The notes beneath the pieces are model-generated. The model ran no database searches and had not been told where the DNA came from. It was given only the letters and a program-made list of their open reading frames with translations. Made by a program: the position numbers and the translations under genes. Positions 2,831 to 61,404 of a stretch of DNA of 64,000 nucleotides are shown piece by piece (the stretch's first letter is position 1; the number at the start of each line of letters is the position of its first letter). The stretch lies in IMG/VR virus record IMGVR_UViG_3300025319_000005, positions 124,001 through 188,000 of that record; one strand, written 5' to 3'.

Positions 2831-3076
2831 ATGAAAAGATTTACGGAAAGTGAATTAAAAAAGTATCTACAATCACAAGTGGAAAAAATAGTTATTTCAG
2901 AAGGTTTAATTAAAAAACAGAAAAGTAATCCGGTTCCGGAATTTGAAAGCTCTAAGAAAGAAACTGTATCAGAATCAGATAATATTCAAATTGAGGATGT
3001 AAAATTACTGGCTGAAGAGATAAAACGTATGAAAGAGCTTATTGATTTTAGAAATCCTTTACTAAAAAAAGAATAA
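2831..3076 (+). CDS. small putative late/virion-associated protein
   Basis: TATTTA at 2801-2806; leader ending VISE. Confidence 0.6.
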   Translation: MKRFTESELKKYLQSQVEKIVISEGLIKKQKSNPVPEFESSKKETVSESDNIQIEDVKLLAEEIKRMKELIDFRNPLLKKE

Positions 3077-3114
3077 TAACAACTTCGATAACAATTGCAG
3101 TTATCCAACGAGTT

Positions 3115-3147
3115 TAAAAAACCTTCAATTTTATTGGAGGTTTTTTG
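3115..3147 (+). terminator. intrinsic terminator
   Basis: AAAAACCTTCAA-loop-TTGGAGGTTTTT followed by a T run. Confidence 0.7.
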
Positions 3148-3192
3148 TTTTTATCAATTTATTCCTTTTTATTTGCATTAAATTATTAAACC

Positions 3193-5338: not shown

Positions 5339-7198
5339 ATGAACTTATCAGAATCGTACAAAAATCGCCTTAAATTATTGTCAGGAATTATTTCTGAGAA
5401 TGTTTCTAATATCCAAGAATTAGATATTGAAGACGTATCTATTCCGGCAAGCTACATAAAAGATTCCTTAAATCCACAAATATGGGATGGTGATAAGTTA
5501 AAACCAGAAATAAGAGAACATTTACTAAATATAGTTAATGGATACAAAAAGCATCTTGAATTAAAAATAGAACCTAAAGATGTTAAATTTTTGGGAAGTA
5601 TGGCTAATTTCAACTGGACAGATGCAAGTGATATTGATGTCCATTTATTTTATGACATAAAAAACATCTCTGATAATACAGAACTTACTAAGCAATTACT
5701 TGAAAGTAAAGGTAAAGATTGGAAAGATAATCACGATATAAAAATAAAAGGTTTCAATGTTGAATTATATGCTCAGGATATTAATGACCAATATCACTCT
5801 GGTGGTGTTTATGATTTACTTAATAACGACTGGATTAGTAAGCCAAAAAAAGAAGATGTTAAAGTTGACAAAGAATTAATAAAAAGAAAATCTTCTTCCA
5901 TTGCTACAAGAATAGAACATGTTGAAAAATTGTCTGATAATAATCCAGATAAAGTTTATAAAGAAGCAAAAAAATTAAAAGATAAAATCAAAAAAATGAG
6001 ACAAGCTGGTTTAGATAAAACTGGTGAATTTTCTGCTGAGAATTTAGTTTTTAAATACTTAAGAAACAATGGTTATCTTGATAGGTTAGGAAAAGTTATC
6101 TCAAAATCTTTTGATAAAAATCTATCACTGGATGAAACTAACATTACTGAAGCTAACCACGATATTGATCCAAGACATTTAAGGAAAGTTATTTTTAAAA
6201 GCAAACGCAGGCCAGAAATGATTATTGTCGTTAGTAAGACTTTAGATGGTAGAATTGTTGACATAGAAAATAAATTCAATATAAATTTCCCATTTAAAGT
6301 AGGACAGATTCTAAATAGAAACCATGAAACATGGGCTTGTAATAATCATTATTTTGTAAATGACAAAGATACTTGTCCGGAAGAAAAAGTATTTGGTATT
6401 AGAAAAAGTGATATTCCTCAAGGACATGAATTAAGAATGATGTTTCCGGGTAAATTTAAAAACGAATCAAAAATGGAATTAAATGAAGAAACCAATAAAC
6501 TTTCCTCGAAAGAATCACTTGAAATAAAAAGGGTAGCTAAAAAAGGAAATTTAAATATTGGAAGATATGATATCAACGAGCTTATTATGGGATTTCAAAT
6601 TGAAAAAGAACATGGTACAGTTAATCCAATAACAAATGTTACTAATGATGATGAAGTGAAAACCTTAAAAATTGCTTTAGCTCATCTTAATGAGGTACCG
6701 GACTATTATACAAAACTTAAAAAGTATGTAGAAAATGGGATTTCAGAATCAAAAAAAGTAAAAAAAAAATTAATGAATGAATCAACAGATTTTGAAGAAA
6801 AACAAAAGCATAAATTAATTATAAAAAAATCCGTTGACAATCTTGACGAAAACAAAATTAATCTTATTAAAAAGTTTATAATTTTTTGTTGTAAAGAATT
6901 AAAGATAGATAGTTCGTGCACTGTATTTTTAACAGGAAAAAGGGGTGGTCCAATTACTACTACTGCAAGTTATAATCCAGAAAATGACCATATTTGGATT
7001 TATACAAAAAACAGGAATATGCTGGCAGATCCAATGAGATCGATGGCGCACGAAATAAGACATTTTAAACAAAAATTAGATGGTGTTTTAACTGAAAAGT
7101 CAGGTGAGGATGGAAGCATTCATGAGAATGAAGCAAATTCTTTTAGTGGATGTATGATTAGAAAGTTTGGTAAAAACAATAGAGAAATTTATCAATAA
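5339..7198 (+). CDS. multi-module protein: leader + Pol-beta-type nucleotidyltransferase + unknown module + DUF5661-like + HExxH peptidase
   Basis: GSMANFNW..SDIDVH; MGFQIEKEH..IALAHLNEVPDYY; MAHEIRH; modules separated by LDE/ITE/LNE/ISE/MNE. Confidence 0.7.
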   Translation: MNLSESYKNRLKLLSGIISENVSNIQELDIEDVSIPASYIKDSLNPQIWDGDKLKPEIREHLLNIVNGYKKHLELKIEPKDVKFLGSMANFNWTDASDIDVHLFYDIKNISDNTELTKQLLESKGKDWKDNHDIKIKGFNVELYAQDINDQYHSGGVYDLLNNDWISKPKKEDVKVDKELIKRKSSSIATRIEHVEKLSDNNPDKVYKEAKKLKDKIKKMRQAGLDKTGEFSAENLVFKYLRNNGYLDRLGKVISKSFDKNLSLDETNITEANHDIDPRHLRKVIFKSKRRPEMIIVVSKTLDGRIVDIENKFNINFPFKVGQILNRNHETWACNNHYFVNDKDTCPEEKVFGIRKSDIPQGHELRMMFPGKFKNESKMELNEETNKLSSKESLEIKRVAKKGNLNIGRYDINELIMGFQIEKEHGTVNPITNVTNDDEVKTLKIALAHLNEVPDYYTKLKKYVENGISESKKVKKKLMNESTDFEEKQKHKLIIKKSVDNLDENKINLIKKFIIFCCKELKIDSSCTVFLTGKRGGPITTTASYNPENDHIWIYTKNRNMLADPMRSMAHEIRHFKQKLDGVLTEKSGEDGSIHENEANSFSGCMIRKFGKNNREIYQ

Positions 7199-51073: not shown

Positions 51074-52021
51074 TTATTCTAATAATAATTCATCAATTGT
51101 TAAAATTGAATTTAAATTATCTATTGTTTTTTTAAATATCATTTTAACATTAATGTTGTTTTGTTCTAATACTAAACTCATTTTTGTTTTATCTATTATT
51201 GAATAATATCCTTTAGTTTCTATGTATAAGTTAAAATTTGGCAAATAAAAATCTGGCACATACGTTTTTTCAACACCTTCTTTAATATATTGAATATATA
51301 TTTTTCTAATCCACAATATTTTATTGTCATTTAACCATTGCGACATTTTTAATTCATATTTTCCTCTTAAAGAATATTCTTCACCAATAATATTTTTTTG
51401 TTTATAAAATTTCACATGTTTAAAATTGTTACTTATTTCATTTTCTTCTAACATCTTGGAGTGAGATTTGCTAATTTTCGATTTTTGTTCAGAAGAAAGT
51501 GGCTTTCCTAATTGGTGATGTATTCTCTTACCAGTAGCATACATTTCTTTTTGTTGCTCAGATGCTTTATTTACCCTATTATCAGTTTCCTTTGTAAGTC
51601 CTCTTGACCATCCCATTTTTGATTTAGTCTCTGCATTACTGTATTTTTTATTTTTATATTCAACTCCATCCGGTGTATGCATTTGAAATATATGACCACA
51701 TATACCAAGTTTGTGAAATATTAATTCGCAATGAGGACATTTATATTTATCTACATCAACTTTCCAAGATTCATCTACTGTTATTTGTTTTTTATTAACT
51801 GTATTACATTTATTATAATGCCTTTCAAAATTAGAAACAGAAATATTTTTATTACATTTATCACAACATTTTGTGTTTTTAGGTTTTCCAAGTAAAGAAA
51901 TACTTAAATTTTTTAATCTTTCTTTTAACTTTGGATTAGATTCACAATTTACTATATGAGCACCAAATTGTTGTGGGATCTCAAACTCAAAAGACTCTTT
52001 GCAATGCGGACAAGTTTTCAT
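51074..52021 (-). CDS. homing endonuclease-like protein (Zn fingers + PD-(D/E)xK)
   Basis: CPHC and CDKC fingers; YVPDFYLP..LYIETKGY. Confidence 0.8.
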   Translation of the reverse strand: MKTCPHCKESFEFEIPQQFGAHIVNCESNPKLKERLKNLSISLLGKPKNTKCCDKCNKNISVSNFERHYNKCNTVNKKQITVDESWKVDVDKYKCPHCELIFHKLGICGHIFQMHTPDGVEYKNKKYSNAETKSKMGWSRGLTKETDNRVNKASEQQKEMYATGKRIHHQLGKPLSSEQKSKISKSHSKMLEENEISNNFKHVKFYKQKNIIGEEYSLRGKYELKMSQWLNDNKILWIRKIYIQYIKEGVEKTYVPDFYLPNFNLYIETKGYYSIIDKTKMSLVLEQNNINVKMIFKKTIDNLNSILTIDELLLE

Positions 52022-52691: not shown

Positions 52692-52727
52692 AAAAAACCC
52701 GAACCTTTTTTAAGTCCGGGTGTGTTA
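52692..52727 (-). terminator. attenuator terminator of tRNA operon 1
   Basis: ACCCGGAC/GTTCGGGT + U6; 5' arm overlaps the antiterminator partner TAACACACCC. Confidence 0.85.
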
Positions 52728-52760
52728 TGTTGTTTCCCTTTTAAGTTTTTATATCTTACT

Positions 52761-52889
52761 TCATGAAACAAAATGTTTTAACACACCCATATTATCGCGG
52801 CTATAATCGCCAGGGGTAATACACGCATACCCGACTGTCGGCATGACTGCCCAAATCGTTGTAATTGTTGTATGTGTTAAATTTTTCAT
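52761..52889 (-). CDS. attenuator leader peptide 1 (42 aa)
   Basis: MKNLTHTTITTIWAVMPTVGYACITPGDYSRDNMGVLKHFVS; between promoter and terminator upstream of tRNA operon 1. Confidence 0.85.
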   Translation of the reverse strand: MKNLTHTTITTIWAVMPTVGYACITPGDYSRDNMGVLKHFVS

Positions 52890-52916
52890 TGAAGATGTTT
52901 TCTTTTTAATTAAACT

Positions 52917-53002
52917 TAAATAGTATAAAAAATTATTTTCTCAAATATTTCTTTCGACCAATTATAACGCAAAGATATAATTAAAGTTTAATAAAAAGCA
53001 AA
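52917..53002 (-). promoter_or_regulatory. tandem promoters of tRNA operon 1
   Basis: TTTG-N21-TATCTTTG (52970-53002) and TATTTA (52917-52922). Confidence 0.75.
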
Positions 53003-53031
53003 TTTATTTTCATTTATTTTTTATTTAACTT

Positions 53032-58432: not shown

Positions 58433-58459
58433 TTGAAATTATTATTTTTTAATATAAAG

Positions 58460-58532
58460 TGCTTCCAGTTGGACTTGAACCAACGACCCGAAAATTAAGA
58501 ATTTCCTACTCTACCATCTGAGCTATGAAAGC
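58460..58532 (-). tRNA. tRNA-Lys(CTT)
   Basis: cloverleaf, TT-CTT-AA. Confidence 0.92.
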
Positions 58533-58620
58533 AATAATTTATAATGTATTATAGATATATGTTGAGTAAAATCCACAGAATGTTCTATTTTATGGATTGT
58601 GCTCAACAAATATGTAATTG

Positions 58621-58694
58621 TGTGTCCGACAAGATTTGAACTTGTGACCTCCGCATTAAAAGTGCGGTATTCTAACCAGCTGAATTACGAACAC
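58621..58694 (-). tRNA. tRNA-Lys(TTT)
   Basis: cloverleaf, CT-TTT-AA. Confidence 0.92.
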
Positions 58695-58698
58695 ATAG

Positions 58699-58785
58699 TG
58701 TACCCAGAAAGATTCGAACTTTCAACGGCCTTTCGGCTCCCCACAGGGTAAAAACCTGTTGCTCTACCAATTGAGCCATGGGTAC
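58699..58785 (-). tRNA. tRNA with Lys(TTT) anticodon and 19-nt variable arm
   Basis: ACAGG-TTTTTAC-CCTGT; variable region GGGGAGCCGAAAGGCCGTT. Confidence 0.85.
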
Positions 58786-58789
58786 AAAT

Positions 58790-58826
58790 AAAAAAGCCTG
58801 AATCTACACAGAGACTCAGGCTTTTT
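58790..58826 (-). terminator. attenuator terminator upstream of the three tRNA-Lys genes
   Basis: AAAAAGCCTGAGTC/GATTCAGGCTTTTT + U run. Confidence 0.85.
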
Positions 58827-58841
58827 GGACTTATAAAAAAG

Positions 58842-58907
58842 TCAATGAGCTATCGTCCCCGGAGACCAGGGTTTCTTAGATTTTTTTATTTTGATTATTG
58901 TTAACAT
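58842..58907 (-). CDS. attenuator leader peptide 3 (21 aa, Lys-rich)
   Basis: MLTIIKIKKSKKPWSPGTIAH; stop lies inside the antiterminator 5' arm. Confidence 0.8.
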   Translation of the reverse strand: MLTIIKIKKSKKPWSPGTIAH

Positions 58908-59018
58908 TTTGTTTATTTTTTTAAATTAAAAAGAGCCCACACTCAACTGGTGGCTAATTTTTATGAACGAGTATTACCCAAGTTCTGTCATCCACTATGA
59001 CAAATTTCTATTGTTATT

Positions 59019-59371
59019 TTAACCTTGAATATCTTGACATTCCGTGATGTTATAGGTCTTTATAAAATCCTTACCATCAGTTATTATTAAATCCAAGTTA
59101 CTTGAATAGTACCCGTTATTAGAACCGTGTCCAGCTATTTTTACAGAATGTCCTTGTATTGGAATTAATTCAATTCCGTAATCAGGAATTCTTTTGAAGA
59201 AATCATCATTTGTTAAATCAAATTCTAATCCTTCAAATCAGCGATTGTTAAATCATCTAATGTTAATGAATGTGATTCACAACAATCTGATTCATGATTT
59301 GAATATAACTTTACTTCATTTTCAAATTCAATTGCATCTGAGTCAACTTTTACTACTTTTAATTTGTTCAT
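59019..59371 (-). pseudogene. frameshifted conserved hypothetical gene
   Basis: MNKLKVVKV..DCCE..AD then a frame change near 59235; one extra T gives DFEGLEFDL..NNGYYS and a 117-aa product. Confidence 0.65.
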
Positions 59372-59387
59372 TTTATTTATGTTTTTG

Positions 59388-59474: not shown

Positions 59475-60245
59475 TTAAAATACAAATTTTAAGACTTTAA
59501 TATTATTTACTTTTTCACTATATCCAAAATTTCTAATTTCATCATGTATTTCTATGTGACAATTTGCACAAACCATAATACATTTATCAACTTCTACTTT
59601 TAATCTTTCAAAACCATAAGATTTGCCACCAATAGTAAAATCTTTTTCACTTGGATTTGTATGATGAAATTGTAAAACTGATGTTGATTTATTATATCCA
59701 CAACATTCACATTTCCATCCTTTATATTCAATTAATCTAATTTTACTTCTTTTTCTCCAATCTATAACAGCCTGACTTTTGGTTTTAGTTTTTTGTCTTT
59801 TTTTATTTGTTTTAATCAAATCATCAGAAATGTAATTTCTAATTGTTGTCCTATCTACCTTAAAATAAGCGGCTGTTTTTCTTAAAGACTTACTTTCTAT
59901 ATAAAAATTAACAACTTCTATTTCAATAAGTTCTTTTTTCTTAAATGTACCACTTGATTTATTTAATCCATACAAATTACATATTTTAATTAACTTATCT
60001 TCTCCAATGTCCAAAATTGACCTTATTTCGTCATAGCTTTTCAATTCTCTTCTGTAAGCAATTATTTTGTTTATAACTTCATCAGTTATTCCAATTAAAA
60101 AACTGTTTCTTACTCCGCCAAGTCCAACATTATTTATGTGATAAGACACAGTGCTTTTTGAACACTTTAATTGTTCAACTATTTCTTTTATAGTTGAGCC
60201 TTTTTCTCTTAAAGAGATAATTTTATTTTTCAAACCTTTATCCAT
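59475..60245 (-). CDS. HNH homing endonuclease with HTH repeats (paralog of 15297-15992)
   Basis: CECCG..LQFHHTNPSEKDF..KCIMVCANCHIEIH; start reassigned to 60245. Confidence 0.87.
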   Translation of the reverse strand: MDKGLKNKIISLREKGSTIKEIVEQLKCSKSTVSYHINNVGLGGVRNSFLIGITDEVINKIIAYRRELKSYDEIRSILDIGEDKLIKICNLYGLNKSSGTFKKKELIEIEVVNFYIESKSLRKTAAYFKVDRTTIRNYISDDLIKTNKKRQKTKTKSQAVIDWRKRSKIRLIEYKGWKCECCGYNKSTSVLQFHHTNPSEKDFTIGGKSYGFERLKVEVDKCIMVCANCHIEIHDEIRNFGYSEKVNNIKVLKFVF

Positions 60246-60316
60246 ATTATTAACTTTATTTGTTAATAAATATGGGATAAAATTCAAAAAAACAAAATTT
60301 ATTTCAAAGAACGTTG

Positions 60317-60394: not shown

Positions 60395-60715
60395 TTATTT
60401 TTTAATTTCTTCTTTAGTAATAGAATCACCAACCTCTATTACTTTGCCAAAAACTTTTTTTGTCCAACCATTTATTCCTCCTTTATTATTTCCTATTAAA
60501 CAACCTTTTTGTGCATTAATTGCTTTTACTAAATGTGTGTAGAAATTGCCGTGCACTTTCGCATAGACTATATCTCCTACTTTAACTTCATCTATTGTAA
60601 TTGGGGCAATTTTATGTTCTTGTCCCGACTTAATTAAAGGAACCATTGAGTTTCCTTTTTCACTGGTGACGAAAGTCTCACCGTTTTGTAATCTTTCTAA
60701 TTTATAATTTCTCAT
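60395..60715 (-). CDS. S24/S26 peptidase-like protein
   Basis: GNSMVPLI..VGDIVY..HLV. Confidence 0.6.
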   Translation of the reverse strand: MRNYKLERLQNGETFVTSEKGNSMVPLIKSGQEHKIAPITIDEVKVGDIVYAKVHGNFYTHLVKAINAQKGCLIGNNKGGINGWTKKVFGKVIEVGDSITKEEIKK

Positions 60716-61114: not shown

Positions 61115-61150
61115 CAAAAAACCCGAACTCTTTTGTAAGTCCGGGTGTGT
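61115..61150 (-). terminator. attenuator terminator of tRNA operon 2
   Basis: ACCCGGACT/AGTTCGGGT + U6; 5' arm overlaps ACACACCCG. Confidence 0.85.
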
Positions 61151-61174
61151 TTATGTTGTTTTAATTTTAATCTT

Positions 61175-61264
61175 TTACGATTCAAAAGGACAATACACAC
61201 CCGCTCGGCTTTTATTACTAAAACTCGATTTGTTAAAATGCTTATGTGTATTATTTGTTGTCAT
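61175..61264 (-). CDS. attenuator leader peptide 2 (29 aa)
   Basis: MTTNNTHKHFNKSSFSNKSRAGVYCPFES. Confidence 0.85.
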   Translation of the reverse strand: MTTNNTHKHFNKSSFSNKSRAGVYCPFES

Positions 61265-61284
61265 TTTGTATTCTTAATATTCTT

Positions 61285-61368
61285 TAAATAGTATAAAAAA
61301 TTATTTTTCTAAAAATTCTTATTATCAATTATAACGCAAAGATATAATTAAAGTTTCAAAAAAGCAAA
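61285..61368 (-). promoter_or_regulatory. tandem promoters of tRNA operon 2
   Basis: TTTG-N20-TATCTTTG (61337-61368) and TATTTA (61285-61290); homologous to 52917-53002. Confidence 0.75.
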
Positions 61369-61404
61369 TTTATTTTGATTTATTTTTTATTTCATTAAAA
61401 AAGG

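What the first reader, a model, noticed from the sequence alone, without database searches (positions are those of the whole stretch)
58790..58907. Lysine-specific attenuator gating a triple tRNA-Lys cassette
Seen: the 21-aa ORF MLTIIKIKKSKKPWSPGTIAH has five Lys codons (4 AAA, 1 AAG) within seven positions. Its stop lies in GCUCAUUGACUUUUU (58836-58850), which can pair with AAAAAGCCUGAGU (58814-58826), the 5' arm of a strong terminator directly before three tRNA-Lys genes. I found no separate TAnnTTTG promoter, so this looks like a second checkpoint nested in operon 2. Established: tRNA-Lys(UUU) is the target of PrrC and of the PARIS effector AriB, and phage-encoded tRNA-Lys variants can rescue infection. 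Inference: a sensor that deploys tRNA-Lys variants only when host tRNA-Lys is destroyed or uncharged.
Basis: partly seen in the sequence, partly recalled or inferred. Interest (0 to 1): 0.9.

Follow-up and report, generated by a model that had tools for sequence, protein, structure and literature searches.

The report
Lysine-sensing gate before phage tRNA-Lys genes
A giant phage places a tiny lysine-rich reading frame and a strong transcription stop signal directly in front of its lysine-tRNA genes, probably so that these tRNAs are made only when ribosomes slow down on lysine codons, a type of control not previously described for tRNA genes.

Summary
On the minus strand there is a 21-codon ORF (58907..58842) with five Lys codons in seven positions. 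A strong intrinsic terminator follows (58826..58791), and three tRNA-Lys genes start 5 nt after it.

The element is not a chance ORF. Six sequence variants of the module occur on 16 phage contigs, and each sits directly upstream of tRNA-Lys(UUU) genes, whatever gene lies upstream. The last two codons before a conserved hairpin are always Lys-Lys.

A different, trp-like four-segment switch fits all variants:
- A ribosome parked on the last Lys codons frees GGGAC to pair with the terminator's 5' arm.
- A ribosome at the stop codon covers GGGAC, so the terminator can form.

A diverged homologue (L139) has a different terminator and C-terminus but keeps this logic (p=0.002 against shuffles).

Unrelated leaders in related phages also mirror their downstream tRNAs:
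- Ile(AUA)-rich leader before tRNA-Ile(UAU)
- Leu/Val/Cys-rich leader before Cys/Val/Leu arrays
- Thr/Asn/Ser/His/Phe/Lys leader before exactly those tRNAs

The most likely reading is a ribosome-mediated attenuator that feeds back on tRNA-Lys supply. The defence-sensor idea is untested, and there is no experimental evidence.

The parts
58842..58907 (-). Leader ORF: 21 codons plus a TGA stop, with an A-rich upstream context and no Shine-Dalgarno sequence
   Evidence: Homologous ORFs of 21-23 codons occur in L014, L015, L032 and 6 more loci, L139/L140, and L146/L147. In the aligned C-terminal block, 6 of 9 variable sites are at third codon positions.
58872..58892 (-). Lys-codon cluster: codons 6-12, with Lys at 6, 8, 9, 11 and 12 (four AAA, one AAG)
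   Evidence: Every variant has 4-6 Lys. The two codons immediately before the Pro codon are Lys-Lys in all six variants, with AAA/AAG synonymous exchange.
58866..58871 (-). Segment 1: CCCUGG (Pro-Trp codons), the 5' arm of hairpin P1. A ribosome whose A site is on Lys codon 11 or 12 covers it.
   Evidence: P1 = -9.1 kcal/mol; 5-6 of 6 pairs are kept in V1-V4. The equivalent in L139 is AACCU:GGGUU.
58855..58862 (-). Segment 2: CCGGGGAC, which is both the 3' arm of P1 and the 5' strand of the predicted antiterminator
   Evidence: GGG (6% of Gly codons) and ACG (5% of Thr codons) are rare in this phage but invariant in V1-V4. A ribosome with the stop codon in its A site covers these bases.
58828..58843 (-). 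Small A/U-rich hairpin P2 that overlaps the stop codon (GACUU...AAGUC)
   Evidence: All 5 pairs are kept in V1-V4.
58809..58822 (-). Segment 3: the parts of the terminator 5' arm and loop that pair with segment 2 (AGC at 58822..58820; GUCUCUG at 58815..58809)
   Evidence: antiterminator complex -16.9 kcal/mol. Sequestration of the arm is worth 11.2 kcal/mol against 5.5 +/- 2.5 in shuffles, p=0.034.
58791..58826 (-). Intrinsic terminator: 10 G/C-rich pairs extended by A:U pairs, a 6-nt loop and a U6 tail
   Evidence: -19.7 kcal/mol. The stem is identical in V1-V4. It is replaced by an unrelated stem in L139. The upstream A-tract that would make it bidirectional is present only in the window.
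58698..58785 (-). tRNA(UUU) of 88 nt with a 15-nt extra variable arm. It is the first gene after the terminator.
   Evidence: and (Rfam tRNA, 64 bits, insertion in the variable region). Long-arm tRNA(UUU) is also the first gene after the terminator in L014, L015, L032, L054, L071, L101 and L147.
58620..58694 (-). Ordinary tRNA-Lys(UUU)
   Evidence: 70.9 bits.
58533..58619 (-). Spacer containing a strong hairpin with no U-tail
   Evidence: -18.1 kcal/mol, z=-4.2.
58459..58532 (-). tRNA-Lys(CUU)
   Evidence: 62 bits.
61121..61372 (-). Context: the upstream module that starts the transcription unit. It has TTTG and TAnnTTTG promoter-like boxes, a 29-codon leader (61264..61175) and a terminator (61146..61121). 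It precedes tRNA-Phe, Asn, His and then the Lys gate.
   Evidence: Homologues are in L015 and L090, and their terminator inner stems covary.
52697..53010 (-). Context: a paralogous module (the same 30-nt promoter-like box, a 42-codon leader and a terminator at 52721..52697). It precedes tRNA Gly, Met, Val, Gly, Pro, Ile, Asp, Ala, Thr and Cys.

Best explanation
The element is a ribosome-mediated (leader-peptide) transcription attenuator that gates the phage's tRNA-Lys array. It works as a negative feedback on Lys decoding.

How it would work:
1. Transcription enters from upstream, because there is no promoter between the terminator and the tRNAs.
2. The 21-codon leader is translated while it is being transcribed.
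3. If Lys-tRNA(Lys) is plentiful, the ribosome runs to the UGA stop. Its footprint then covers GGGAC (segment 2).
4. The terminator 5' arm stays free, the terminator hairpin forms, and RNA polymerase stops 5 nt before the first tRNA.
5. With no ribosome at all, segment 2 is held by the Pro-Trp codons in hairpin P1. In the relatives it is also held by a longer fold-back of the ORF on itself. The terminator forms in this case too.
6. If Lys decoding is slow, the ribosome waits on the last Lys codons, which directly abut segment 1, and covers segment 1.
7. Segment 2 is then free and pairs with the loop-proximal half and the base of the terminator 5' arm (the antiterminator).
8. Polymerase reads through and more tRNA-Lys is made, which relieves the stall.

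Shown directly: the anatomy, its conservation, its linkage to tRNA-Lys genes, and the energies and geometry of the alternative folds.

Inferred: translation of the ORF, stalling at the Lys codons, and conditional read-through.
For: 1. Linkage to tRNA-Lys genes.
- Six leader variants on 16 contigs all lie directly before tRNA-Lys(UUU) genes. The upstream neighbour varies: a DUF7448-like gene, a 109-135-aa gene, another gene, or tRNA-Cys.
- In the close lineage, every Lys(UUU) array fetched that shows at least 100 nt of upstream sequence starts with this module.

2. No separate promoter.
- Only 8-40 nt separate the U-tract from the first tRNA. The conserved, intact tRNAs must therefore be transcribed through the terminator.

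3. Regulatory codons.
- Lys-Lys always directly precedes segment 1, with AAA/AAG exchange.

4. Coding signal.
- ATG and stop are kept.
- The ORF lengths of 21, 22 and 23 codons differ by whole codons.
- Variable sites are mostly at third codon positions.

5. Alternative folds.
- With a ribosome mask on the last Lys codons, the terminator 5' arm is paired upstream in all five variants tested. With the mask at the stop codon it is not.
- Arm-sequestration energy exceeds 500 dinucleotide shuffles: p=0.034, 0.038, 0.028 and 0.126 for V1-V4, and p=0.002 for V5.
- V5 has a different terminator, segment 2 and peptide C-terminus, yet keeps the same logic.
- Energies in the window are 1:2 = -9.1, 2:3 = -16.9 and 3:4 = -19.7 kcal/mol.

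6. The same principle in unrelated leaders.
- L010: four of the first five Ile codons in the leader are AUA, and tRNA-Ile(UAU) follows. A leader segment copies the terminator's 3' arm.
- L143 and L144: Leu/Val/Cys-rich leaders precede Cys/Val/Leu arrays.
- L015: leader residues 2-19 are 17 of 18 from {T,N,S,H,F,K}, and the array is Phe, Ser, Asn, His, Thr, Lys.
- In an enrichment matrix, each of the 8 leaders matches its own array type best.

7. Control.
- The operon-type hairpin pattern hits 9 viral stretches, all before tRNA arrays. It also hits 16 cellular genome stretches, none before a tRNA.
Against: - There is no experimental data. Translation, stalling and read-through are all inferred.
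- V1-V4 have identical terminator stems and identical GGGAC, so the antiterminator shows no base-pair covariation. Only one compensatory pair was seen, in the fold-back helix, and four sequences are too few for significance (243 of 500 shuffles do as well).
- A plain duplex test of segment 2 against segment 3 is not better than dinucleotide shuffles (p=0.09-0.30). It is only modestly better than synonymous recoding (p=0.02-0.18).
- The antiterminator helix is short (5-7 pairs plus 2-3) and leaves the middle of the terminator arm free.
- Lys is the commonest residue in this phage, so Lys richness alone is weak evidence (P about 0.08 per leader).
- Conservation of PW..GTIA in V1-V4 is more than a simple codon counter needs.
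- Phage-specific promoters of unknown type cannot be excluded.
- The ribosome masks are approximate, and cross-ribosome pairings in the predictions had to be ignored.
Confidence: 0.6

Rival explanations
1. The hairpin is a fixed, leaky terminator or insulator, and the small ORF is either an independent micro-protein gene or only a translational spacer. A constant fraction of polymerases reads through, and Lys supply is not sensed.
For: - The terminator is canonical and strong.
- The PW..GTIA peptide motif is conserved in V1-V4, with synonymous changes at the Pro, Ile and Ala codons.
- The 2:3 duplex alone is not beyond shuffles.
Against: - It does not explain why the module always travels with tRNA-Lys genes.
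- It does not explain why Lys-Lys always abuts the hairpin.
- V5 swaps both the peptide C-terminus and the terminator but keeps the alternative-fold logic.
- Unrelated leaders mirror their own tRNA arrays.
Confidence: 0.15
2. It is a purely RNA-level element, such as a 5' leader structure that guides processing or stabilises the tRNA precursor (RNase P, E or III). The ORF is then incidental.
For: - The leader region is strongly structured (z=-4.3; consensus fold-back of the ORF on itself).
- One compensatory pair was found.
- Another strong hairpin lies between the tRNA-Lys genes.
Against: - The hairpin has a U6 tail in every variant, which is the terminator signature.
- The ATG, the frame and the stop codon are kept despite length differences, and variation is biased to third codon positions.
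- The Lys codons are kept through AAA/AAG exchange, which points to codon identity rather than sequence identity.
Confidence: 0.1
3. It is a nascent-peptide arrest leader of the TnaC or SecM type. The PW..GTIA[HY]-stop peptide would stall the ribosome in response to another signal, with the Lys run only slowing passage.
For: - The C-terminal peptide is invariant in V1-V4 at P, W, G, T, I and A.
- The spacing to the stop codon is fixed.
Against: - The homologous V5 and V5b leaders have an unrelated C-terminus (PDRGWLRLLS) but the same position and fold logic.
- A ribosome arrested at the stop codon would cover segment 2 and favour termination, which gives no obvious regulatory gain.
- Part of the apparent peptide conservation is explained by RNA helices: P1 and the fold-back helix.
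Confidence: 0.07
4. Chance: an A-rich intergenic stretch in a 28% G+C genome happens to contain a Lys-rich ORF next to a terminator.
For: - Lys is 11.7% of residues.
- There are 22 windows with at least 5 Lys in 7 positions across the six frames of the 64 kb.
Against: - The module is conserved as a unit in six variants on 16 contigs.
- It always lies before tRNA-Lys genes.
Confidence: 0.02

Closest known systems
Leader-peptide transcription attenuators of amino-acid operons (E. coli trp, his, leu, thr, ilv, pheA)
   Same: - A short translated leader with a run of codons for the regulated amino acid.
- Four RNA segments forming mutually exclusive 1:2, 2:3 and 3:4 pairings.
- An intrinsic terminator as 3:4.
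- A ribosome stalled on the regulatory codons favours 2:3 and read-through.
- No translation, or fast translation, favours termination.
- The relative energies resemble the values I recall for trp (about -11, -12 and -20 kcal/mol; from memory).
   Different: - The cargo is tRNA genes, not biosynthetic enzymes. The product acts directly on the sensor, because more tRNA-Lys relieves the stall.
- The stop codon lies after segment 2 rather than between segments 1 and 2.
- The antiterminator is short and split.
- The element sits inside a phage tRNA operon and has no promoter of its own.
- No Rfam leader family matches (Thr_leader 18.7 bits against a threshold of 55).
pheST (pheM leader) attenuator of E. 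coli phenylalanyl-tRNA synthetase (from memory)
   Same: A leader-peptide attenuator that controls a component of the translation apparatus. It responds to the charged level of one tRNA species.
   Different: - It controls a synthetase gene in a cellular chromosome, not tRNA genes in a phage.
- There is no sequence relationship.
T-box riboswitches
   Same: They sense the state of a specific tRNA and decide between terminator and antiterminator upstream of translation-related genes.
   Different: - T-boxes bind the tRNA directly and need no ORF.
- No T-box family match was found.
- The UGGN candidate in the leader is not conserved: UGGU, UGGA and UGGC.
Phage tRNA-Lys variants that escape anticodon nucleases (T5 tRNA-Lys against PARIS AriB; PMC11464382, PMC12409363)
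   Same: The phage carries several tRNA-Lys(UUU) copies that differ from ordinary ones. Lys(UUU) is a known defence target.
   Different: - The T5 escape rests on anticodon-stem substitutions. Here the odd copy carries an extra variable arm.
- No regulation of the T5 genes by a leader peptide is described.
- No nuclease was examined here.
Nematode nev-tRNAs (class II tRNAs with non-Leu/Ser anticodons; PMC3333845)
   Same: They are long-variable-arm tRNAs carrying an anticodon that belongs to a class I amino acid. The first tRNA of the cassette has the same combination.
   Different: - The group of organisms is different.
- The phage tRNA shares its D arm and anticodon arm with an ordinary phage tRNA-Lys and has A73.
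- Charging with Lys is therefore plausible, but it was not tested.

Membership tests
Ribosome-mediated (leader-peptide) transcription attenuator | A short ORF immediately upstream of the regulated genes, maintained as an ORF in relatives | tested here: met
   ORFs of 21-23 codons in six variants. The ATG and stop codon are kept, and the lengths differ by whole codons. In the aligned C-terminal block, 6 of 9 variable sites are at third codon positions.
Ribosome-mediated (leader-peptide) transcription attenuator | The ORF is actually translated | not testable with these tools
   Only indirect signs are available: frame conservation and an A-rich start context without a Shine-Dalgarno sequence.
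Ribosome-mediated (leader-peptide) transcription attenuator | A cluster of codons cognate to the regulated function | tested here: met
   Each leader has 4-6 Lys codons, and Lys-Lys directly precedes segment 1 in all variants. The cargo is tRNA-Lys(UUU) and tRNA-Lys(CUU).
Ribosome-mediated (leader-peptide) transcription attenuator | An intrinsic terminator between the leader and the cargo, with no promoter after it | tested here: met
   Only 8-40 nt lie between the U-tract and the tRNA. No TAnnTTTG match on this strand lies between the module near 61340 and the tRNA-Lys cassette. Unknown phage promoter types are not excluded.
Ribosome-mediated (leader-peptide) transcription attenuator | An antiterminator that is mutually exclusive with the terminator | tested here: inconclusive
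   It is predicted in all five variants. Arm sequestration is better than shuffles (p=0.002-0.126), and the logic is kept in V5 with different sequences. However, there is no base-pair covariation, and the plain duplex test is not significant.
Ribosome-mediated (leader-peptide) transcription attenuator | Geometry: a ribosome on the regulatory codons uncovers the antiterminator strand, and a ribosome at the stop codon covers it | tested here: met
   Codon-by-codon ribosome masks. The GGG codon is exactly five codons before the stop in V1-V4.
Ribosome-mediated (leader-peptide) transcription attenuator | Read-through responds to the supply of charged tRNA | not testable with these tools
   This needs a coupled transcription-translation assay, or 3'-end mapping in infected cells.
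T-box riboswitch | Stem I specifier loop and a conserved T-box sequence that pairs with the tRNA 3' end | tested here: not met
   No T-box hit in the Rfam scan at E up to 10. The UGGN candidate is not conserved.
Lysine riboswitch, or other curated leader RNA families (Thr_leader, L10_leader) | A match to the family covariance model at its gathering score | tested here: not met
   L10_leader 27.7 bits against 44, and Thr_leader 18.7 bits against 55. There is no lysine riboswitch hit.
Nascent-peptide arrest leaders (TnaC or SecM type) | A peptide motif conserved across homologues that is needed for arrest | tested here: not met
   PW..GTIA is kept in V1-V4, but V5 and V5b have a different C-terminus in the same module.

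The most novel reading that the evidence does not exclude
Proposed reading: a whole lineage of giant phages, probably infecting Bacteroidota, gates each of its tRNA arrays with a leader peptide that samples exactly the codons those tRNAs read. This would give codon-by-codon demand sensing of tRNA supply.

Within that system the Lys gate would be a counter-defence trigger. When a host anticodon nuclease cuts tRNA-Lys(UUU), ribosomes stall on the leader. The gate opens and releases a burst of phage tRNA-Lys, led by a long-variable-arm version that the nuclease may not recognise.
Probability: 0.2. Interest if true: 0.95.

Novelty: new variant of a known kind. Interest (0 to 1): 0.82.

Why it matters
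- Leader-peptide attenuation is a textbook mechanism, but it is known for enzymes that make amino acids, not for tRNA genes. Six full-text literature searches found no description of it for tRNA genes or phage tRNA arrays.
- If confirmed, it would show that phages measure the decoding speed of particular codons and adjust their own tRNA output accordingly.
- It would give a direct handle on the long-open question of why phages carry tRNAs and when they use them.
- It would offer a compact, portable sensor of the availability of a single tRNA species.
- It would link tRNA supply to the arms race around tRNA-cutting defence systems.
- The element is about 120 nt long and can be tested in vitro.

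Tried and rejected
2. Known RNA families, including T-box, lysine riboswitch and Thr/L10 leaders: nothing reaches threshold.
3. A degenerate tRNA or tmRNA 5' end. GGGGACGAUAGCUCA looks like one by eye, but ARAGORN and Rfam find nothing there. The string is instead explained by the Gly-Thr-Ile-Ala codons and their pairings.
4. A bidirectional terminator serving the convergent plus-strand genes. The upstream A-tract exists only in the window, not in V2-V5.
5. A promoter between the terminator and the tRNA. There is no room for one and no TAnnTTTG match. The sigma-70-type scan is at chance level.
6. An upstream terminator at about 58960..58930. It is a weak 4-pair hairpin, and the region is not more structured than shuffles.
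7. Leader segment CCUGGUCU pairing with the terminator's 3' arm. This is possible in the window but not conserved, so it was dropped.
8. Searching for more variants through the neighbouring 109-aa gene. The homologues found (L137, L141-L145) are not followed by a Lys leader.
9. A scan of cellular genomes for the Lys terminator: no hit.
10. A scan of cellular genomes for the operon-type hairpin: 16 hits, none near tRNAs.
11. A leader in the gap before the Leu tRNAs of L144: none found.
12. DnaA-box-like strings in the tRNA spacers: not pursued.
13. My metagenome pattern was too degenerate. More variants certainly exist.
Full report
**Setting**

The window is bases 124001-188000 of a 212,632-bp viral contig, IMGVR_UViG_3300025319_000005. 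It has 28% G+C and carries 16 tRNA genes, all on the minus strand. Homing-endonuclease-like and other small genes lie between the tRNAs. The nearest cultured relative by DNA is a Winogradskyella phage. A 636-kb uncultured phage also matches.

Two conserved modules carry TTTG and TAnnTTTG boxes, the Bacteroidota promoter type as I know it. A Bacteroidota host is therefore inferred, not shown.

**Check of the observation**

Lys codons are at positions 6, 8, 9, 11 and 12. The hairpin at 58826..58791 has 15 pairs, a 6-nt loop and a U6 tail, and folds at -19.7 kcal/mol. The first tRNA begins 5 nt after the U-tract.

The three tRNAs are Lys(UUU, 88 nt), Lys(UUU) and Lys(CUU). No TAnnTTTG match lies on this strand between 61337 and 58270. 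The element therefore sits inside the unit that starts at the module near 61340.

Within the window alone the Lys run is only mildly unusual. Three of 536 small ORFs have such a run, and Lys is 11.7% of residues.

**Homologues**

Pattern scans of viral and metagenome contigs recovered the same module elsewhere:

| Variant | Leader peptide | Where found |
|---|---|---|
| V1 | MLTIIKIKKSKKPWSPGTIAH | the window, plus two identical contigs |
| V2 | MLVVTAIVTKKKKKPWTQGTIAY | L014 |
| V3 | MLVVVAIVIKKKKKPWSQGTIAY | L015, a 518-kb contig |
| V4 | MLVLAIVIKKTKKPWPPGTIAY | seven metagenome contigs |
| V5 | MKTTIKIMKSKKPDRGWLRLLS | L139, L140 |
| V5b | differs from V5 at residues 4-6 | L146, L147 |

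That makes 16 contigs in total. Four points stand out:

- In every case a hairpin with a U-tail follows the stop codon by 17-22 nt, and tRNA(UUU) genes follow that by 8-40 nt.
- The upstream neighbour differs. It is a DUF7448-like gene in the window, a 109-135-aa gene in V2-V4, another gene in L063, and tRNA-Cys in V5. The leader and terminator therefore travel with the Lys tRNAs.
- In the close lineage, every Lys(UUU) array fetched that shows at least 100 nt of upstream sequence begins with this module. More distant phages (L004, L142) lack it.
- Lys-Lys always directly precedes the Pro codon, with AAA/AAG exchange.

In the 12-codon block shared by V1-V4, six of the nine variable sites are at third codon positions. 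P, W, G, T, I and A never change.

**The switch**

Folding with ribosome footprints gives a different and consistent picture.

The footprint model masks 12 nt on the 5' side of the P site and 12-13 nt on the 3' side of the first A-site base. The segments in the window are:

- Segment 1 is CCCUGG, the Pro-Trp codons, at 58871..58866.
- Segment 2 is CCGGGGAC at 58862..58855.
- Segments 1 and 2 form hairpin P1 (-9.1 kcal/mol).
- Segment 2 can instead pair with GUCUCUG (58815..58809), which is the loop-proximal end of the terminator's 5' arm.
- GCU (58850..58848) pairs at the same time with AGC at the base of the arm. The whole antiterminator complex is worth -16.9 kcal/mol.

The three ribosome states give three outcomes:

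| Ribosome position | What is covered | Predicted result |
|---|---|---|
| A site on Lys codon 11 or 12 | segment 1 | antiterminator forms, read-through |
| Stop codon in the A site | 58859..58831, so exactly GGGAC but not the terminator | terminator forms |
| No ribosome | nothing | P1 forms first, then the terminator |

This is the trp logic. In V2-V4 a further 8-pair helix joins the Ala-Ile-Val codons to the Thr-Ile-Ala codons. It shows one compensatory exchange, and the start region pairs with the stop region. The untranslated ORF therefore folds back on itself.

V5 has an unrelated terminator (AUCCAAGUC...GACUUGGAU), a different segment 2 and a different peptide C-terminus. It still shows the same three states, and its antiterminator (-14 to -16 kcal/mol) is as strong as its terminator (-13.5 kcal/mol).

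**Statistics of the switch**

I measured the free energy gained by pairing the terminator 5' arm with the stretch left free by a ribosome on the last Lys codon. I compared it with 500 dinucleotide shuffles of that stretch.

| Variant | Observed (kcal/mol) | Shuffle mean (kcal/mol) | p |
|---|---|---|---|
| V1 | 11.2 | 5.5 | 0.034 |
| V2 | 8.8 | 4.6 | 0.038 |
| V3 | 10.1 | 4.7 | 0.028 |
| V4 | 7.5 | 4.9 | 0.126 |
| V5 | 8.6 | 2.4 | 0.002 |

V1-V4 are not independent of each other. V5 is independent of them in the relevant sequences.

Weaker points:

- A simple duplex test is not significant against shuffles.
- There is no base-pair covariation in the 2:3 helix, because V1-V4 are identical there.
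- GGG and ACG are rare codons in this phage (6% and 5%) yet invariant. This fits an RNA constraint, but P1 and the fold-back helix could explain it as well.

**The same principle elsewhere in the lineage**

The window has two paralogous modules of promoter-like box, leader and terminator in front of its two large tRNA groups: 61372..61121 and 53010..52697. In both, GGGUGUGU inside the ORF is complementary to ACACACCC, which overlaps the terminator arm. ACACA in the N-terminal codons can hold GGGUGUGU instead.

The terminator's inner stem covaries between the window, L015 and L090, while the part shared with the antiterminator is kept.

Leader composition tracks the tRNAs that follow:

| Locus | Leader composition | tRNAs that follow |
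|---|---|---|
| L015 | residues 2-19 are 17 of 18 from {T,N,S,H,F,K} | Phe, Phe, Ser, Ser, Asn, Asn, His, Thr, Lys x5 |
| L010/L012 | contains all nine amino acids of its array | Ala, Tyr, Gly, Trp, Pro, Ile, Arg, Thr, Cys |
| L010 (unrelated leader) | four of its first five Ile codons are AUA | tRNA-Ile(UAU); a leader segment copies the terminator's 3' arm |
| L143, L144 (distant) | Leu/Val/Cys-rich | Cys/Val/Leu arrays |

In an enrichment matrix, each of eight leaders fits its own array type best. The residue ranges and sets were chosen after looking at the data. The individual P values are therefore descriptive only.

As a control, the operon-type hairpin pattern hits 9 viral stretches, all before tRNA arrays. 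It also hits 16 cellular genome stretches, none near a tRNA.

**Interpretation**

The best explanation is a ribosome-mediated attenuator that makes transcription of the tRNA-Lys array depend on how fast Lys codons are decoded (confidence 0.6). The phage proteome is Lys-rich, with 88% of Lys codons being AAA, so demand for tRNA-Lys(UUU) must be high. The array carries 3-5 Lys tRNAs.

The feedback would close directly, because the product relieves the stall. Rivals are a fixed leaky terminator with an unrelated micro-ORF, a processing or stability structure, and a peptide-arrest leader. V5 argues against the last of these.

The background facts are correct (PMC11464382, PMC12409363). Nothing here tests that step, and ordinary supply-and-demand control explains the anatomy as well.

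**Comparison and novelty**

The element works like the trp, his, leu, thr and pheA leaders, and in purpose like the pheST leader (the latter from memory). It meets the anatomical criteria of that class. The antiterminator criterion is supported but not proven. Translation and the regulatory response could not be tested.

It is not a T-box, a lysine riboswitch or any Rfam leader. Six literature searches found no report of leader-peptide attenuation of tRNA genes or of phage tRNA arrays. That library does not cover most subscription journals.

I rate it a new variant of a known kind: a classical mechanism with a new cargo and a new feedback logic, apparently used systematically by a phage lineage.

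**Limits**

- All evidence is computational.
- Energies are for 37 C and naked RNA.
- The ribosome masks are approximate. Pairings predicted across a masked ribosome were ignored as sterically implausible.
- The host is unknown.

Noticed in passing
window 58698-58785 (-); also L014:1416-1504, L015:4389-4474, L142:4353-4439, L147:490-577: The first tRNA after the Lys terminator has a UUU anticodon, A73 and an extra variable arm of about 15 nt. In the window-type copies the arm is a 3-pair stem capped by a GNRA tetraloop (GAAA, GUAA or GCAA in different phages). Its D arm and anticodon arm are identical over 26 nt to an ordinary 73-nt phage tRNA-Lys (L004). Which amino acid it carries, and why it leads the array, are unknown.
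   Followed up: partly
L007:4497-4582, L011:3621-3713 and 5598-5683, L015:2853-2940 and 3063-3149, L139:1218-1303, L142 (several), L143:3520-3608: Long-variable-arm (83-95 nt) versions of normally short tRNAs are common in these giant phages, often next to a normal copy. They cover Asn, His, Trp, Pro, Thr, Cys, Glu, Asp, Ile and Met. There are 29 such genes in 20 related loci. I found no description of this in the literature searches.
   Followed up: partly
window 61121-61372 (-) and 52697-53010 (-): Two paralogous modules share an identical 30-nt promoter-like box, followed by a 29- or 42-codon leader and a terminator, in front of the two large tRNA groups. The leader composition mirrors the tRNAs served. 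GGGUGUGU in the ORF can pair with ACACACCC at the terminator. These modules look like the main gates, and the Lys element is a nested one.
   Followed up: partly
L010:6509-6655 (=L013:4192-4223 region); L143 near 2228; L144 near 2273: Unrelated leader and terminator modules with matching codon content. An AUA- and Arg-rich leader precedes tRNA-Ile(UAU). Leu/Val/Cys-rich leaders precede Cys/Val/Leu arrays in distant giant phages.
   Followed up: partly
window 59019-59374 (-): A DUF7448-like gene is split into two frames near 59225: a 49-aa piece and then a 65-aa piece in another frame. This could be a frameshift, a sequencing error or decay. The pieces were searched separately. Only the first gave a weak Pfam hit.
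   Followed up: partly
window 58533-58619 (-): A strong hairpin (-18.1 kcal/mol, z=-4.2) with no U-tail lies in the spacer between the second and third tRNA-Lys. Spacers in relatives carry inverted repeats containing TTATCCACA-like strings. It may be a processing site or a protein-binding site.
   Followed up: partly
L010:6865-7150; L139:1528-2060: One tRNA gene carries an insertion of about 230 nt in its anticodon loop, which looks like a group I intron. Another tRNA-Lys-like gene is interrupted by a stretch encoding an HNH-type endonuclease.
   Followed up: no
window 59475-60287 (-), 51074-52021 (-), 60395-60715 (-): Genes lie between the tRNAs: an HTH/NUMOD1 protein (homing-endonuclease-like), a protein with a phage endonuclease I domain, and a weak S24-peptidase-like protein. 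This suggests the tRNA region is a mosaic shaped by mobile endonucleases.
   Followed up: partly
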